A stretch of DNA of 64,000 nt from Blastocladiella emersonii ATCC 22665. Lineage: Eukaryota; Fungi; Blastocladiomycota. The notes under the pieces were generated by a model. It searched no databases and was not told the origin of the DNA. It was given only the letters and a program-made list of their open reading frames with translations. A program made the translations under genes and the position numbers. The stretch lies in the NCBI GenBank assembly GCA_025594325.1, contig JANHCV010000012.1, positions 1,240,001-1,304,000 on the forward strand, written 5' to 3'. Below, piece after piece: positions 46,014 through 51,622 of this stretch; the first letter of the stretch is position 1; the number at the start of each line of letters is the position of its first letter.

Positions 46014-46901
46014 GCGTGAGAATACAGGGGTAGTAGGGGTTCTGCATCGCGATTCGGCCTTGGCAGGGAGCGACCGTCAGCGGCTCCGCGATGCGAGCTC
46101 CGGCGCATCGTAGGCATTTGCTAAGCTGGAGCCCTCGGGAGACGTGCGTCCCGCCGCGTCCCGCCGCGGGGCAGCGCATATCGTGATAGCGGCGGCGGTG
46201 CACCGGAACGGGTGACGCGGTTGGTGGATAGTGGCGCAGCACCGACGCGTGGGACACCCGCCTGCCCGCAACCCGCAGTTGACCGCTTGCCCGGGACACG
46301 CTTTGTCACCGCACCGCGCGCATCGCGCGGAACCGCGCCGCGCCGTGATCTCCGCCGGCCGCGAGCCACGGCGCGCACGCCGCGCGCGCGGACGCGGTGG
46401 GAGGCATCGACGCGACGCGGCCGCCTTCTCGATGCCCGTGGAACGCGTCTCCCTATGCAAACGCGCGCCCTCGATGGGGTTTGGAAGGGACCAAGCGGCA
46501 GGGGCCGGTGCGAATCGCCCGATGGACGCGCGGCGGTGTCAGCGCGGGCCAAGGCACTCGTTGGGCTCGATGGGCAGGGTCGGGAGGGAGACGAGGGTGA
46601 GGGCAAGCGCGCGTTACGAATGGCTCATGGCGGACGCAGGCCGTGATACTTTGAGCGACACGGGGCGCGGGCGCGCAGTGCACCCAATCCGTCTCTGCGC
46701 TGGGTGCACCGTTGGCGAGATTCATGATCGGTGCCGCGCCATAAAGCTTGCGGGATCGGGTCTCTTCCTTCTCGCTCCCTCCTGTGACTCTACGAAGCGT
46801 TTGACGAAGCCCATCAGCGAGCGACCCTCGCACACCACGGATCATCGTCGGCGCCCTTCCTCACGCCTCCATCTCCGACTCGGCGCTCATCGACCGCGAC
46901 C

Positions 46902-49900
46902 ATGCCGTGCCCGATCAACCGCATCGACTTGCAGCAGTCGCCGCACACGCACCCGCGCGGCCTCGACTCGGGCGGCGACCTGCCGGGCCTCGCCCGCGAG
47001 CGCAAGCTGACCATCAACAGCCACGACCATGGCCATGGTCACGGCCACGGCTACGGCGGCCACGGCGGCGGCCACAGCCATCCGTCGTCGCCCGGCCTCG
47101 CGCACGCTCACGGCTCGGCGCCGTCCGACTTTGACCTGTCGGGCCCCGACCACGACGGGATGCCCGGCGGCGGCACTGGTGCCGCGGCCCACGCGGCGGC
47201 GGCCTACCACCCCGACCAGGAGCAGCGCGACATCGTGTCCACCTGGCGCGACTCCATGGACTCGAGCGTGCGCCGTATCTTCGAGAACCTGCGCCTCGGT
47301 ACGCGATCACTGATCCGCTCGTGGCCCGCAGCACTCGACTCACTGTAAACTTGTCCGCGTTTAGACATTGATCGCATGGAGGTGAACATCAAGCAGGCCG
47401 AGGGCGAGATCTTCCGTCAAGAGGAGGAGATCTTCTTTGTTCGACAGGACGAAATCGAACTCGACCAGATGCAGAAGCGGCAGACAGACGAGCTCAAGCG
47501 GGCCGACGACGTGTACCAGGCGATGCTCGACGAGCGCAAGACACGCAAGCACACCAAGAAGCTGCAGTCGCAGATCCACAAGGAGGCCAAGGCGCGGCAC
47601 CTCAAGATGACGTACCAGGACGAGGCCAAGCACATGGCGCTGCAGCTGCGCAACACGCTGGCGCAGCACCGCAAGCGGTTCGAGTTCCTCATCACGCACA
47701 TCGAGGCCAAGCACGACCGCCAGCGCGCGCAGCTCCGCGCCGCCCAGGACCGCAAGCTCAACGAGCAGCGCGCGCTGCTCGAGATCGAGACCAAGGGGCT
47801 CACCGAGGAGGTGCGCGCCGAGGTGTTCAAGGATTTCGCGTACCGCATGAACCACCAGTCGGCCGTCGACAAGCAGGTCTCGGAGCAGCTCCGCGACGTG
47901 CAGCGGCTCGAGCTCAAGCACCGCAAGGAGCGGTTCGACGCCGAGGCCAAGGCGCTCGAGGAGGTGGCCTTCCTGCGCGCCGCGCACCACCGCATCATCA
48001 ACGAGCTCGAGACCAAGCACCGGTTCGACTACGCCGCCGAGAAGGAGCGCATCGACGAGGCCCGCGAGAAGATCAAGCTCCTGCAGCTCGAAATCACGCA
48101 CCTCGCCGAGCTCAAGTCGCTGCGCGCCCTGCACAAGGTCCAGCTCGCGCAGGCCGCACGCACCCAGCGCGTCGCGTCCGCGCTCCGCCTCAAGAAGTGG
48201 CGCGACGTGCTCAACCCCGAGGCCGGCGACGAGGACGCGAGCGACGTGCACGGCGCGCTCGGCGCCGTTAGCCTCTCGAATGTCGGGTCGCAGGCCGCCC
48301 TGCACCACGCCGAGGACGCGACCGCATCGTCGTCCGACAGCCTGCACGACGACCAGCCGTTCCACGCGGGCCAGCACGCGCACGGCCACGGCGCCGCGCA
48401 TGGCGGGATGGGCGGCGGCATGATGGGTGGGTACGGCGACGAGGAGACGTCATCGATCCCCGAGACGGTGCGCGACAACTCCAACTCGGACGCGGCGACC
48501 AAGGCGCTGCTCGAGGACCAGGCCAAGGCCAAGGACACGCTCGAGAAGATGGTCGAGCAGCTCAAGCACCAGCTGGCGCGGCAGAAGGAGGAGCTCAAGC
48601 GCGTGCAGCGCGAGCTGGGCGACGACCAGCGGCGCGTCGAGCAGTCCATCAAGGCGCGCATGGACGAGCTCGACCTGCAGCAGGACACGGAGATGCGCAG
48701 CACGCGCAAGTCGCACGAGTCGGCCGTCGCCGACATGATCGCCATGCAGCAGCGCGAGTACCAGATGGACGCCAACATCCGCGTCACCGAGCGCAAGATG
48801 CTGACCGAGCGCCGCACGCTCAACTCGATCCTCGACGCCGTCTACGACGCCATCGTCAACATCCGCCCCGACGGCATCATCACGCGCTTCAACTCGGCCG
48901 CCGAGAAGATCTTTGGGTACAAGGCCGAGGAGGTCATCGGCAAGAACGTGCGCATGCTCACGCCCGAGGAGGTGTCGCGCAAGCACGACGGGTACCTCAC
49001 CAAATACCTGACCACGGGCGTCAAGTCCAAGGCGTGGAACGGCATCTCCAACTCGGGCCGCCGCAAGGACGGCAGGTACGCTCCTTTCCGTGTCGCTGCA
49101 CCACTCGCCGTCGGCGTGACTAACCTTCGTTTAACGTACGATAGCCTGTTCCCGATCATCCTGTCGGTCTCCGAGGTCAAGGAGGAGGACTTCCACCTGT
49201 TCACGGGCGTGGTGCGCGACGTGACCGAGAAGCAGCGCAACGAGGAGCTGGCGCGCGCCGAGCAGGAGCGCAAGGAGTCGGAGATGGAGGCGCTCATCTC
49301 GCTGCTCGACGTGGAGCGCACCAAGTCGCAGTCGCTCATCAAGGAGATCCTGCCCGAGTCGATTGCGGCGCAGCTGATGCGCGGCGAGGCCGTGGTCCCG
49401 CGCACGTACCCGGACGCGACCGTCCTGTACACGGACCTGGTCGGGTTCACGGCCATCTCGTCGGCAGCGCGCCCGCTCGACGTCGTCGACATGCTCAACG
49501 ACCTGTACTCGTCGTTCGACGAGATCATCGAGCAGTACGACGTGTACAAGGTCGAGACCATCGGCGACTCGTACATGGTCGCCTCGGGCGTGCCTCGCCC
49601 GAACGGCAACAAGCACCTGACCGAGATGGCCAAGCTCGCGATCCACCTCGTCAAGGCCATCAGCACCGTCAAGATCCGCCACCTGCCCGACGTGACGCTG
49701 CGCATGCGCATCGGCATCCACACGGGCCCCGTCGTCGCGGGCGTCGTCGGCCGCAAGATGCCCCGCTACTGCCTGTTCGGCGACACGGTCTCGATCGCCA
49801 GCAAGATGGAGTCGTCGGGCGTGCCCATGAAGATCCAGGTCTCGGAGACCACGCACGACCGCCTCGACGCCCTCGGCGGGTTCAACTTTGAGGCCCGCGG

Positions 49901-50213
49901 CGAGATGAACATTCCGGTACGCTTGGCTGCTGGTGCTGCACGTTTTGTCGCGAGCAGCTCACTGACTCGCGTATTCAACCGCACGCGTACGTAGGGCAAG
50001 GGCATGGTCCGCACCTACTTCCTGACCGGCTGCGACGGCTTCAACCCGGTCCTCGCGCCAGTCGAGGAGAGCGTCGGGTCGCCGCTCTCGGCGCTCGCCC
50101 TCAGCAACCTCAAGATCGACCAGCCCGAGAGCCAGGACGATGGCCGCAACCTGTTCGTGTCAGACGGCGCGAGCAGCAGTAGCAGTAGCAGCCGCCCGCA
50201 GTCGGGGATTTGA
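46902..50213 (+). CDS. Coiled-coil + FixL-like PAS + guanylate cyclase (class III), 3 introns
   Basis: PAS: DAIVNI..GIITRFNSAAEKIFGYKAEEVIGKNVRML..KHDGYL..RKDGSLFPI.LSV..FTGVVRD. Cyclase: LYTDLVGFT, KVETIGDSYM, RIGIHTGPVVAGVVG.KMPRYCLFGDTV. Confidence 0.92.
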
Positions 50214-50902
50214 TGGTCGACTTGATGACGCATGATAAGCTGTAATACATGAAAGTTGTGGGGAAACAACGGTCATAAATCGGAGATGACTTTGACCACG
50301 CTCAGCTCGGACGATCGGCTTTGAGACTTGGCTCCATGCAAGCGAACCGAGAATGCCGCGCAGTTCCTCGTCGATGTGGTTGATGAATGCCATGGCCGTC
50401 TCGTGTGAGCCTCCCAAGGGCGCGCTTCCTCAAACCCTACGGCACTTCGATCTCAGCAATATCGAAGTCAGCGAACAGCACAGCGAGACCTCGAGCCTGC
50501 TTATGCCCACTGCCAAGCAGGCATACCACGTGCTGACATCGCCGAAACGGCTCCCAGCCATTGGTCCTTTGCGCATCGGTTGGCGCAAACCCTTGCGCGA
50601 ACCCCCCTTGCGCGACCCTTTGCGCGAGGGTTTGCGCAAAGGGGCCGATGTTGGGCACCATCGAGACCTCATGTATGCGCAAACCAGGGCCTCGGTTCGC
50701 GCAAACGTTGGCGCAAGAGGTCGCGCCTGGTTCGCGCCGCCGGACGCGTTGCGCCTCAATATAGAATCACGGTGCTCACCCTGACAGGCATTCCGATAGA
50801 CCGATTCGAGTAATAGCTCTGTATTAACCATGATACGCCGCTACGCGCGGCCGCCACCGCGCCCATCAGGGCCCTCGCGCGGCCCGAGCTCGTCCGCGAC
50901 CA

Positions 50903-51622
50903 CTACCGCCGCCGCCACTCCTTGATGCGCGGGGACGGGTGCTTGAGCTCGGTCTCGATGCCGCCGACCCGTGGCCGCCCGCCCACCTTCGACGTGCCAG
51001 TCGATCTTGATCGGGCCGAGCGGGCGCGCTTGATGGCCGCGCGGAGGCTGGCGCCCTTGATCTCCTTGAGCGACGTGATCTCGCACTTGGCGTCGGCGAT
51101 GGCCACGGTCACCGACCGTCGCAGCGAGTCGAGCTTGGACTTGTGCGCCGCTGACTGTCGTTGCCCTGGTGCGGAGGGGCAAGGGGTTAGCGAGGCGGTG
51201 CGAAGCGGTAGTTGTGCGCGAGAGACGCACCGAGTGGTCATGATGGCCGCGGGCGACTTGTCCGTGCGCGACAGCGAGTCGAGGAACTTGGACTTGTCGA
51301 TCACGACGCCAGCGACCTACAGCTTGATCTGTAGCGGGGTTGATGCGAGCGTGTCAGAGAGGGTCTCGTGGCGCGCGTCTAAGGCCGCGTACCAGATCGA
51401 GAACGCACCGCGACCAAGCTTGCTCTGGATCTTGCCGTACTCGACCTCGAACGCTTTGACGGGTGTGAGGAAGTCGATGGCCATGGTCGGGGCCGTGGTT
51501 GACGTTGCTCGAGGTCTTGACGGCCGTCGCGGACGCGTCCTTGGTGACCATGGCGGTGCAGTTGGTGATCGAGTCGATCTCGGCCTTGACGACACCATGG
51601 GCGCGCGGGCGACGGCGGCCAC
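50903..51622 (-). pseudogene. Decayed accessory ORF inside the CACTA element
   Basis: Coding-like segments GVVKAEIDSITNC, AIDFLTPVKAFEVEYGKIQ, VIDKSKFLDSL and KSKLDSLRRSV, with a frameshift, an in-frame TAG and a GTGCGT...CAG intron. Confidence 0.45.

What the first reader, a model, noticed from the sequence alone, without database searches (positions are those of the whole stretch)
48820..49930. FixL-type (putative heme) PAS domain fused to a guanylate cyclase: candidate gas-sensing cGMP system in a zoosporic fungus
Seen: after splicing, the PAS reads KHDGYLTKYLTTGVKSKAWNGISNSGRRKDGSLFPIILSVSEV..FTGVVRD. This aligns without gaps to the FixL heme pocket as I recall it and keeps the proximal His (codon 48984-48986). 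The distal O2-stabilising Arg position appears to be Ile. The cyclase carries GTP-specifying Glu (KVETIGD) and Cys (PRYCLFG), and ~450 aa of coiled coil precede the PAS. Established: eukaryotic gas-sensing guanylate cyclases use H-NOX rather than FixL PAS, and cGMP signalling is central in blastoclad zoospores. Inference: an O2/NO/CO/redox-regulated cyclase with an unusual architecture.
Basis: partly seen in the sequence, partly recalled or inferred. Interest (0 to 1): 0.8.

Follow-up and report, generated by a model that had tools for sequence, protein, structure and literature searches.

The report
FixL-type PAS guanylate cyclase half-subunit
This water-mould gene encodes one half of a two-part cGMP-making enzyme; its sensor domain descends from the bacterial heme oxygen sensor FixL, so it is a candidate gas or redox receptor built differently from the animal nitric-oxide receptor.

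Summary
The gene (46902-50213, +, four exons, 1032 aa) is Blastocladiella emersonii H9P43_008877.

- **PAS domain:** its best solved relatives are all FixL heme domains (E 1.7e-21; predicted fold TM 0.9, rmsd 1.9 Å). His673 aligns without gaps to the proximal histidine, and the distal Arg position is Ile693.
- **Cyclase:** it has the GTP-type Glu and Cys.

Three points change the reading.

- **Not a singleton.** FixL-PAS cyclases form one fungal clade across Blastocladiomycota, Chytridiomycota and Rozella. The family consensus keeps the whole FixL pocket, including the Arg.
- **An outlier copy.** This gene and one paralog have a remodelled G strand (SKAWNGIS instead of K-V-I-G-x-G-R-R). FixL-style O2 sensing is therefore unlikely. 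Heme binding stays plausible but untested.
- **A half-site cyclase.** It matches the sGC-alpha pattern: both metal Asp are kept, but the ribose Asn is Ser919 and the phosphate Arg is Lys923. Three complementary beta-like paralogs exist in the same genome, including BeGC3.

It therefore probably works like an sGC heterodimer without being an sGC, since it has no H-NOX domain. The scan had already found this family on other DNA of this genome (s1-248137). No paper I could search describes it.

The parts
46902..50213 (+). Whole gene, 4 exons (46902-47298, 47365-49075, 49145-49916, 49995-50213), 1032 aa = B. emersonii H9P43_008877
   Evidence: spliced translation identical to P0001
47299..47364 (+). 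Intron 1 (66 nt, GT..AG, phase 1)
   Evidence: frame continuity; identity of the product to P0001
47232..48212 (+). Family-specific N-terminal helical region, first part: two very long helices (aa 111-275 and 280-415). The range also includes intron 1.
   Evidence: AlphaFold on alignment A2, pLDDT above 90. Homologous across the whole family, including beta-like members and Rozella (blastp 1e-30 to 1e-163). No Pfam match.
48225..48461 (+). Disordered His/Gly/Ser-rich linker (aa 420-498)
   Evidence: pLDDT 35-43; composition
48465..48800 (+). Third long helix (aa 500-611) running into the PAS N-cap helix
48819..49226 (+). FixL-lineage PAS domain (aa 618-730), interrupted by intron 2
   Evidence: Pfam PAS/PAS_9. 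PDB phmmer top 7 hits are all FixL, E 1.7e-21. AlphaFold pLDDT 89; Foldseek top 20 hits are all FixL heme domains, TM 0.9, rmsd 1.8-1.9.
48984..48986 (+). His673, aligned to the FixL proximal heme ligand (Bj His200 / Rm His194)
   Evidence: Gapless alignment. His kept in 54 of 61 fungal family members and 155 of 206 other FixL-like PAS domains.
49023..49049 (+). Remodelled FG-loop/G-strand, aa 686-694 (KSKAWNGIS). Includes Lys688 (Bj Ile215 position), Trp690 (Bj Gly217) and Ile693 (Bj Arg220, 49044-49046).
   Evidence: The family consensus is K-K-V-I-G-x-G-R-R. This version occurs only in P0001 and P0002. Lowest model confidence of the PAS domain (pLDDT 70).
49076..49144 (+). Intron 2 (69 nt, in frame, no stop) inside the PAS domain
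   Evidence: Absent in paralog L001. Present at the same site in paralog L002.
49227..49406 (+). Signalling helix and cyclase transducer element (aa 731-790), ending ...SLIKEILPESIAAQLMRGE
   Evidence: Helix after the last PAS strand in the model. Weak sub-threshold Pfam HNOBA C-terminal match. The linker is exactly 40 aa in 51 of 59 family members and 33 aa in four.
49407..50039 (+). Class III cyclase catalytic domain (aa 791-975), interrupted by intron 3 (49917-49994)
   Evidence: Pfam Guanylate_cyc, E 5e-60. PDB: ANP receptor 1e-67, sGC alpha-1 3e-49.
49434..49436 (+). Asp800, first metal-binding Asp. The second is Asp844 at 49566-49568.
   Evidence: residue roles from Table 1 of PMC6005667
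49554..49556 (+). Glu840, guanine-specifying. Its partner is Cys912 at 49770-49772.
49791..49805 (+). Ser919 (49791-49793) replaces the ribose-binding Asn. Lys923 (49803-49805) replaces the transition-state/phosphate Arg. The motif is GDTVSIASKMES instead of GDTVNTASRMES.
   Evidence: (alignment to the ANP receptor); Table 1 of PMC6005667

Best explanation
The gene encodes the alpha-type subunit of a soluble, heterodimeric guanylate cyclase specific to zoosporic fungi. Domain order: a roughly 500-aa family-specific helical region, a PAS domain of the FixL/DosP heme lineage, a fixed 40-residue signalling helix with a cyclase transducer element, then a class III cyclase domain. Shown: the domain identities, the FixL ancestry of the PAS, retention of the F-helix His, loss of the distal Arg and Ile, and the alpha-like catalytic pattern (Asp800, Asp844 and Arg891 kept; ribose Asn is Ser919; phosphate Arg is Lys923). 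Also shown: the same genome has three beta-like paralogs with the complementary pattern (first Asp is Glu, Arg891-equivalent is Lys; Glu, Cys, Asn and Arg kept). These are H9P43_005231, H9P43_002510 and H9P43_009044 (BeGC3). Inferred: alpha and beta pair head-to-tail to form one competent GTP site and one pseudo-site, as in animal sGC. The alpha PAS holds heme b on His673. In Blastocladiella the beta PAS has lost that His, so only alpha would carry the sensor cofactor. A change at the heme (ligand binding or redox) would move the FG loop and beta-sheet, and be transmitted through the coiled-coil linker to the orientation of the catalytic dimer. Because the O2-stabilising Arg and the Ile215-equivalent are gone, the likely signal is NO, CO or redox state rather than O2 bound in the FixL manner.
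For: PAS lineage: PDB phmmer top hits are all FixL (E 1.7e-21 to 8e-16), then DosP. The AlphaFold model (pLDDT 89) matches FixL heme domains at TM 0.9, rmsd 1.8-1.9 Å and 38-47% identity. His673 sits on the proximal His in a gapless alignment. The F-helix has dN/dS 0.18 against the paralog. The F-alpha His is the only invariant heme contact in this PAS cluster (PMC10468136). FixL variants at the positions changed here still bind heme: Sm R200A/Q/E/H and I209M (PMC10765370) and the R220A heme-domain crystal structure 1y28. Bacterial His+/Arg- relatives are common (28 of 212). Half-site cyclase: eight-residue pattern DEDRC-S-K-K against the sGC-alpha pattern in Table 1 of PMC6005667. Beta-like partners carry the pattern E-E-D-K-C-N-R. 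In the tree, the blastoclad clade (support 99) splits into a beta clade (100) and an alpha clade (88), each holding Blastocladiella, Allomyces and Coelomomyces, so both types have been co-retained since before these genera diverged. Catenaria and Sorochytrium also have both types. Alpha and beta share the N-terminal helical region and the 40-aa linker. Both paralogs are under purifying selection (omega 0.20 overall, 0.11 cyclase, 0.30 PAS).
Against: No cofactor can be seen from sequence. Five of seven G-strand residues differ non-conservatively from an otherwise near-invariant motif. These include Trp at a Gly position (Gly in 49 of 61 fungal and 144 of 206 other domains), which could fill the pocket. 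This segment has the lowest model confidence (pLDDT 70). In the same genus the beta subunits have already lost the His, and Spizellomycetales deleted the whole F helix, so loss of heme is a recurrent outcome in this family. Arg-to-Lys and Asn-to-Ser are milder than the changes in some inactive halves, so weak homodimer activity is not excluded. No RNA run was listed, so expression and co-expression with a beta subunit are unknown. Pairing is inferred only from complementarity and co-occurrence.
Confidence: 0.55

Rival explanations
1. The PAS of this copy no longer binds heme. It serves as a dimerisation and transmission module, like the cofactor-free PAS of animal sGC, or binds another small ligand. 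Regulation enters through the partner subunit or the N-terminal helical region. The cyclase is still an alpha-type half.
For: The G strand is rewritten (SKAWNGIS), with Trp at a near-invariant Gly and Lys at the distal Ile. Model confidence is lowest there. Heme-site loss recurs in the family: the beta subunits of Blastocladiella and Catenaria, and Spizellomycetales. In the FixL/DosP PAS cluster, 40% of sequences lack the His and may sense other things (PMC10468136). PAS dN/dS (0.30) is higher than that of the cyclase (0.11).
Against: His673 and the whole F helix (HDGYLxKYLTTG) are kept and under purifying selection (omega 0.18). In family members that lost heme-site features, the His itself or the helix is gone, which is not the case here. 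Two of the three distal hydrophobic residues (Leu709, Val711) and Phe722 are retained.
Confidence: 0.3
2. It is a stand-alone homodimeric, O2-sensing guanylate cyclase.
For: FixL ancestry of the PAS. Both metal Asp, Glu and Cys are present. Many chytrid family members do have the full homodimer-capable residue set together with the canonical His and Arg (28 of 59).
Against: This copy lacks the ribose Asn and the phosphate Arg (Ser919, Lys923), exactly the sGC-alpha/AC-C1 deficit. It also lacks the O2-stabilising Arg and the Ile215-equivalent. The I209M change in S. meliloti FixL abolishes the stable O2 complex.
Confidence: 0.07
3. It is a catalytically dead, regulatory or scaffolding paralog that does not form an active cyclase with anything.
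For: Two catalytic residues are missing. There are three alpha-like paralogs in one genome. No expression data could be obtained.
Against: The cyclase domain is under strong purifying selection (omega 0.11). All residues that an alpha half needs (Asp800, Asp844, Arg891) are kept. The alpha clade has been conserved across blastoclad genera alongside a complementary beta clade.
Confidence: 0.06

Closest known systems
FixL heme-PAS oxygen sensors of rhizobia (PDB 1d06, 1drm, 8js5) and E. coli DosP heme-PAS
   Same: PAS fold with 38-47% identity. Gapless alignment with His673 on the proximal His. Conserved F helix (HDGYL..Y..TG). Leu236 and Ile238 equivalents retained. The PAS is followed by a coiled-coil linker to the output domain.
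   Different: The output is a eukaryotic class III guanylate cyclase, not a histidine kinase or a c-di-GMP phosphodiesterase. The distal Arg220 is Ile, Ile215 is Lys, Gly217 is Trp, and the propionate partners Arg206 and His214 are Lys and Ser. Heme binding is untested.
Animal soluble guanylate cyclase (alpha1/beta1 NO receptor)
   Same: PAS, coiled coil, then cyclase domain order. Complementary alpha and beta catalytic halves give one active site and one pseudo-site. This protein has the alpha residue pattern of Table 1 in PMC6005667. Probably only one subunit of the pair carries heme.
   Different: There is no H-NOX domain. The candidate heme site is inside the PAS itself. The candidate heme subunit is alpha rather than beta. 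A 500-aa helical N-terminal region is unique to the fungal family. The alpha/beta split arose independently within fungi, and more than once.
Fungal rhodopsin-guanylyl cyclases (BeGC1/RhoGC; heterodimeric RGC/NeoR of chytrids)
   Same: Same organisms. A sensor linked by a coiled coil to a class III GC. Both homodimeric and heterodimeric forms exist in zoosporic fungi (PMC10622942).
   Different: This protein is soluble, with a PAS sensor rather than a membrane rhodopsin. BeGC1 has the complete catalytic residue set (Table 1, PMC6005667).
BeGC3 (H9P43_009044) of B. emersonii
   Same: Same PAS-cyclase family and same overall architecture.
   Different: BeGC3 is beta-like (first Asp is Glu; Asn and Arg kept) and its PAS lacks the F-helix His. 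The published 'HNOBA domain' is a sub-threshold match (22.3 bits against a 23.4-bit cut-off) to the last 40 model positions only, i.e. the signalling helix.

Membership tests
FixL/DosP-type heme-binding PAS (cluster 3 of PMC10468136) | PAS fold with closest sequence and structure relatives among FixL/DosP heme domains | tested here: met
   (E 1.7e-21 to FixL; DosP 4e-8). (TM 0.9, rmsd 1.8-1.9 Å; top 20 hits all FixL).
FixL/DosP-type heme-binding PAS (cluster 3 of PMC10468136) | Histidine on the F-alpha helix at the proximal-ligand position | tested here: met
   His673 (48984-48986) aligns to the FixL proximal His without gaps.
FixL/DosP-type heme-binding PAS (cluster 3 of PMC10468136) | Heme b actually bound | not testable with these tools
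   Needs spectroscopy of the expressed domain.
FixL-type O2 sensor (functional subclass) | Distal Arg (Bj Arg220 / Sm Arg214) on the G strand that stabilises bound O2 | tested here: not met
   Ile693. Arg is present in 51 of 61 fungal family members but not in this gene.
FixL-type O2 sensor (functional subclass) | Distal hydrophobic triad Ile215/Leu236/Ile238 | tested here: not met
   Lys688/Leu709/Val711: the Ile215 position is Lys. Sm I209M at this position loses the O2 complex.
Class III guanylate cyclase, self-sufficient homodimer type | All eight catalytic residues in one chain (2 Asp, Glu, Cys, Arg, Asn, Arg, Lys) | tested here: not met
   Pattern D-E-D-R-C-S-K-K: the ribose Asn is Ser919 and the phosphate Arg is Lys923 (Table 1 of PMC6005667).
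Heterodimeric class III cyclase, alpha/C1-type half | Keeps both metal Asp and the alpha-Arg574-equivalent; lacks the ribose Asn and phosphate Arg | tested here: met
   Asp800, Asp844 and Arg891 present; Ser919 and Lys923.
Heterodimeric class III cyclase, alpha/C1-type half | A complementary beta/C2-type half is encoded in the same genome | tested here: met
   P0044, P0049 and P0229 have the pattern E-E-D-K-C-N-R. Physical pairing was not tested.
Soluble guanylate cyclase (NO receptor) family | N-terminal H-NOX heme domain (Pfam HNOB, PF07700) | tested here: not met
   No HNOB hit. The N-terminus is made of long helices with no Pfam match. The only HNOBA hit is 18.5 bits, below the cut-off, and lies on the signalling helix.
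Soluble guanylate cyclase (NO receptor) family | PAS, coiled coil, then cyclase order, with a cyclase transducer element | tested here: met

The most novel reading that the evidence does not exclude
This alpha subunit, or one of its two alpha paralogs, is the heme-bearing half of the NO- (or CO-/redox-) responsive guanylate cyclase behind the reported Ca2+-NO-cGMP control of zoospore biogenesis in B. emersonii. It would pair with BeGC3 or another beta-like subunit. That would be a convergent re-invention of the sGC principle (heterodimer, one heme, one active site plus a pseudo-site) using a FixL-type heme-PAS instead of H-NOX. Its newly evolved distal pocket (Lys688/Trp690/Ile693) would discriminate against O2.
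Probability: 0.25. Interest if true: 0.85.

Novelty: new variant of a known kind. Interest (0 to 1): 0.62.

Why it matters
**A new kind of eukaryotic gas sensor, if heme binding holds.** Eukaryotic gas-sensing cyclases are known to use H-NOX. A FixL-type heme-PAS wired to a guanylate cyclase would be a second, independent solution.

**A concrete candidate for an open question.** B. emersonii has a reported NO-cGMP pathway (Vieira et al. 2009, as cited in PMC9730499 and PMC10889981). The genome paper found no NOS gene and named no H-NOX receptor. Its only link to NO was an 'HNOBA' hit on BeGC3, which I find to be a sub-threshold match to the signalling helix. This analysis gives testable candidates: three alpha subunits that keep the His, and three beta subunits.

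**A natural series of sensor states.** The family includes canonical His+Arg homodimer types in chytrids (among them the amphibian pathogens Batrachochytrium), alpha/beta splits that arose several times, and lineages that lost the heme helix. That range is useful for studying how sensors and heterodimers evolve.

**A possible tool.** The fixed 40-residue PAS-to-cyclase linker makes these proteins candidate parts for engineered gas- or redox-switched cGMP tools, alongside the rhodopsin cyclases from the same fungi.

Tried and rejected
- **Frameshift origin of the odd G strand.** I tested whether SKAWNGIS arose by a compensated frameshift. The +2 frame reads QVQGVER, which loosely resembles KVIGxGR. 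However, the DNA of paralog H9P43_002938 aligns codon for codon with no indels, so plain substitutions explain it. Rejected.
- **Allele or assembly duplicate.** I checked whether H9P43_010198 is a second copy of the window gene. Its flanks are unrelated and it lacks one intron, so it is a true paralog.
- **RNA evidence.** I asked for RNA runs covering 48700-50213. None was listed, so read laying was not used and expression is unknown.
- **N-terminal region.** The ESM Atlas look-up gave only weak generic coiled-coil neighbours (score 0.63 or less). A heptad Fourier score was not discriminating. AlphaFold was more informative.
- **Bacterial promoter/terminator scan downstream of the gene.** This is irrelevant for a eukaryote and is ignored.
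- **Literature.** Four searches found no paper that links FixL-type PAS to fungal cyclases. The original BeGC paper (PubMed 19393757) is not held. My recollection that it used the heme-oxidising inhibitor ODQ could not be checked and is not used as evidence.
- **LOV/flavin reading.** Rejected. The motif is GKNVRMLTP, with no Cys, and all the best matches are heme-PAS domains.
Full report
**What is in the sequence**

Reading 46500-51500 and splicing at three GT..AG introns gives a 3099-nt coding sequence. The exons are 46902-47298, 47365-49075, 49145-49916 and 49995-50213. Its 1032-aa product is identical to the database protein P0001, 'hypothetical protein H9P43_008877' of Blastocladiella emersonii ATCC 22665.

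The intron inside the PAS domain (49076-49144) is 69 nt, in frame and free of stops, so the splice needed checking. Three observations support it:
- Paralog H9P43_010198 (locus L001) has no intron there and encodes 340 residues contiguously across the junction.
- Paralog H9P43_002938 (L002) has an intron at exactly the same site and phase.
- No family member has an insertion at that point.

No RNA run was listed for this stretch, so there is no read-level evidence.

**Domains**

Pfam finds PAS/PAS_9 (aa 618-730) and Guanylate_cyc (E 5e-60). Nothing else passes threshold.

Residues 100-611 are homologous across the whole family (blastp E 1e-30 to 1e-163). AlphaFold predicts three very long helices (aa 111-275, 280-415, 500-611) separated by a disordered His/Gly/Ser-rich stretch.

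**Is the PAS really FixL-type?**

Yes, on three lines of evidence.
- Against all PDB sequences, the seven best matches are FixL heme domains (E 1.7e-21 to 8e-16), followed by E. coli DosP heme-PAS.
- The alignments to R. meliloti and B. japonicum FixL are gapless over the whole domain. This gives the mapping Bj number = this protein's number minus 473. His673 (48984-48986) falls on the proximal His.
- An AlphaFold model built on a 92-sequence alignment (pLDDT 89) has FixL heme domains as its 20 best PDB matches (TM 0.9, rmsd 1.8-1.9 Å, 38-47% identity). DosP comes next.

A survey of about 3 million PAS domains places FixL and DosP in one cluster. It finds the F-alpha His to be the only residue that contacts heme in all structures, and its primary determinant (PMC10468136).

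**What differs from FixL**

| B. japonicum FixL | This protein |
|---|---|
| Arg220 (distal, stabilises O2) | Ile693 |
| Ile215 | Lys688 |
| Ile216 | Ala689 |
| Gly217 | Trp690 |
| His214 | Ser687 |
| Arg206 | Lys679 |
| Leu236 | Leu709 (retained) |
| Ile238 | Val711 (retained) |
| Phe249 | Phe722 (retained) |
| Val253 | Val726 (retained) |

The changed segment has the lowest confidence in the model (pLDDT 70). The roles of R206, the I215/L236/I238 triad and the FG loop are taken from PMC10765370. That paper also shows that S. meliloti FixL R200A/Q/E/H and I209M all still carry heme, and that I209M binds CO but forms no stable O2 complex. A crystal structure of the R220A heme domain exists (1y28). 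The substitutions therefore argue against FixL-style O2 sensing more than against heme binding.

**The family**

Searching with PAS plus cyclase returns the same architecture in three groups:
- Blastocladiomycota: Blastocladiella, Allomyces, Catenaria, Coelomomyces, Sorochytrium.
- Many Chytridiomycota: Batrachochytrium, Polychytrium, Synchytrium, Rhizophlyctis, Entophlyctis, Powellomyces and others.
- Rozella.

The PAS domains of 69 such proteins form one clade (support 97). Their nearest outside neighbours are FixL-like PAS repeats of the nucleariid Parvularia (support 82-83), then bacterial sensor kinases.

The family consensus keeps the full FixL signature, NHDxYLxNYLTTG[IV]KKVIGxGRR. His is present in 54 of 61 members and Arg in 51 of 61. 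Bacterial relatives, including tandem arrays, keep EHDGYL...IIGIGRE almost invariantly.

The G strand of the window gene, SKAWNGIS, occurs only in this gene and in paralog H9P43_010198. The two paralogs differ at dS 0.2 with dN/dS 0.30 in the PAS, 0.18 in the F helix and 0.11 in the cyclase. The derived domain is therefore maintained by selection.

Other lineages show outright loss of the heme site:
- Spizellomycetales deleted the F helix and shortened the linker by exactly seven residues.
- The beta-like subunits of Blastocladiella and Catenaria replaced the His.

His+/Arg- variants also exist in bacteria (28 of 212). They often carry a Met in the G strand, as in DosP.

**The cyclase is a half-site**

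The eight catalytic positions of class III cyclases are listed in Table 1 of PMC6005667.

| Position | This protein |
|---|---|
| Metal Asp 1 | Asp800 |
| Base-specifying Glu | Glu840 |
| Metal Asp 2 | Asp844 |
| Phosphate Arg (alpha Arg574) | Arg891 |
| Base-specifying Cys | Cys912 |
| Ribose Asn | **Ser919** |
| Phosphate Arg | **Lys923** |
| Lys | Lys932 |

 This is the sGC-alpha / adenylate-cyclase-C1 pattern.

The same genome encodes three paralogs with the complementary pattern: Glu for the first Asp, Lys for the Arg891 position, and Glu, Cys, Asn and Arg all kept. They are H9P43_005231, H9P43_002510 and H9P43_009044. The last is BeGC3 according to PMC9730499.

In a maximum-likelihood tree, the blastoclad sequences (support 99) split into a beta clade (100) and an alpha clade (88). 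Each contains Blastocladiella, Allomyces and Coelomomyces, so both types have been kept side by side since before these genera diverged. Catenaria and Sorochytrium also have both. Separate alpha/beta splits appear in Polychytrium and in a metagenomic pair, and Rozella has an alpha-like copy beside a homodimer-capable one. Most chytrid members keep all eight residues and could act as homodimers. Alpha and beta share the N-terminal helical region and the 40-residue PAS-to-cyclase linker (51 of 59 members).

I reached the half-site reading before seeing that other readers of this scan had noted the same (s1-283754, s1-248140). A follow-up on another piece of this genome had described the family as complementary subunits (s1-248137).

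**Most likely mechanism**

*Shown:* the domain identities, the ancestry of the PAS, the residue patterns, and the existence and co-retention of complementary paralogs.

*Inferred:*
- Alpha and beta form a head-to-tail dimer with one GTP site. Asp800, Asp844 and Arg891 come from alpha; Glu, Cys, Asn and Arg come from beta. The second site is a pseudo-site.
- The alpha PAS carries heme b on His673.
- A ligand or redox change at the heme is passed through the FG loop and beta-sheet into the coiled-coil linker and transducer element, and so to the catalytic dimer.
- The signal is more likely NO, CO or redox than O2.

I put about 0.97 on the architecture and lineage, 0.75 on the obligate-partner reading, and 0.55-0.6 on heme binding by this particular copy.

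**Comparison with what is known**

The protein works like animal sGC but is not one. It has no H-NOX domain. Its only HNOBA match (18.5 bits, below the cut-off) covers just the signalling helix.

The same is true of BeGC3. Its HNOBA hit is 22.3 bits against a 23.4-bit cut-off and covers only model positions 176-215. That hit was the published basis for suggesting NO regulation of BeGC3 (PMC9730499). In fact BeGC3 has a FixL-lineage PAS that has lost its His.

The genome paper lists 17 cyclases and their Pfam architectures, but its text never mentions PAS, FixL or subunit complementarity. Searches for FixL together with fungal cyclases found nothing. The library does not hold subscription-journal papers such as Vieira et al. 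2009, so absence there is not proof of novelty.

**Verdict**

The feature is a real member of an undescribed but database-annotated fungal family. It combines two known principles, FixL heme-PAS sensing and sGC-like heterodimeric catalysis. The window's copy is a derived alpha subunit with a rewritten distal pocket.

Noticed in passing
P0229 (H9P43_009044, BeGC3), aa 739-778; not in the window: The published 'HNOBA domain' of BeGC3 is a sub-threshold Pfam match (22.3 bits against a 23.4-bit cut-off) to the last 40 model positions only, i.e. the signalling helix before the cyclase. BeGC3 is a beta-like PAS-cyclase whose PAS has lost the F-helix His.
   Followed up: yes
L001:5384-6404 (paralog H9P43_010198) and L002:2954-3150 (paralog H9P43_002938): The PAS intron of the window gene (49076-49144) is absent from one paralog and present at the same site and phase in the other. 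This is an intron loss after a gene duplication that copied only the coding region; the flanks are unrelated.
   Followed up: yes
P0061, P0066, P0068, P0070, P0071 (Spizellomycetales and related chytrids): These PAS-cyclases have deleted about 18 residues covering the F helix and its His. Four of the five have a PAS-to-cyclase linker of 33 residues instead of 40, exactly one heptad shorter; the fifth (P0068) has 39.
   Followed up: partly
P0124 (Parvularia atlantis Nk52, 713 aa): This nucleariid protein has several FixL-like PAS repeats, two of which keep His and Arg, and no catalytic domain detected. It is the nearest non-fungal neighbour of the fungal PAS clade (support 82-83). This hints that the heme-type PAS was already present in early Holomycota.
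   Followed up: partly
window 49125-49127 region of the protein: His720 (codon 49194-49196): A His at the start of the last PAS strand (EDFHLFTG) is conserved in 55 of 61 fungal family members, but is Arg, Thr or Lys in bacterial FixL-like PAS domains. Its role is unknown.
   Followed up: no
window 47022-47081 and 48363-48437: There are two His/Gly-rich low-complexity tracts (HDHGHGHGHGYGGHGGGHSH; HAHGHGAAHGGMGGGMMGGYG), in the N-terminal tail and in the disordered linker. They could bind metal. They were not compared across paralogs.
   Followed up: no
window 50575-50720: Just downstream of the stop codon there are many closely spaced copies of TTGCGC[AG]-type motifs in both orientations. They lie at the edge of the transposon-like element that another reader noted (s1-283697).
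   Followed up: no
P0257 (diatom Attheya sp.) and P0243 (metagenome): FixL-like PAS repeats are fused to an adenylate-type (Lys/Asp) class III cyclase. The fusion of this PAS type to cyclases has therefore arisen outside fungi too.
   Followed up: no
P0126, P0130, P0143, P0149, P0153 and others (bacterial sensor kinases): Bacterial FixL-like PAS domains that keep the His but lack the distal Arg often have a conserved Met in the G strand (RAMNERG, RQMGMG). This recalls the Met95 ligand of DosP.
   Followed up: no
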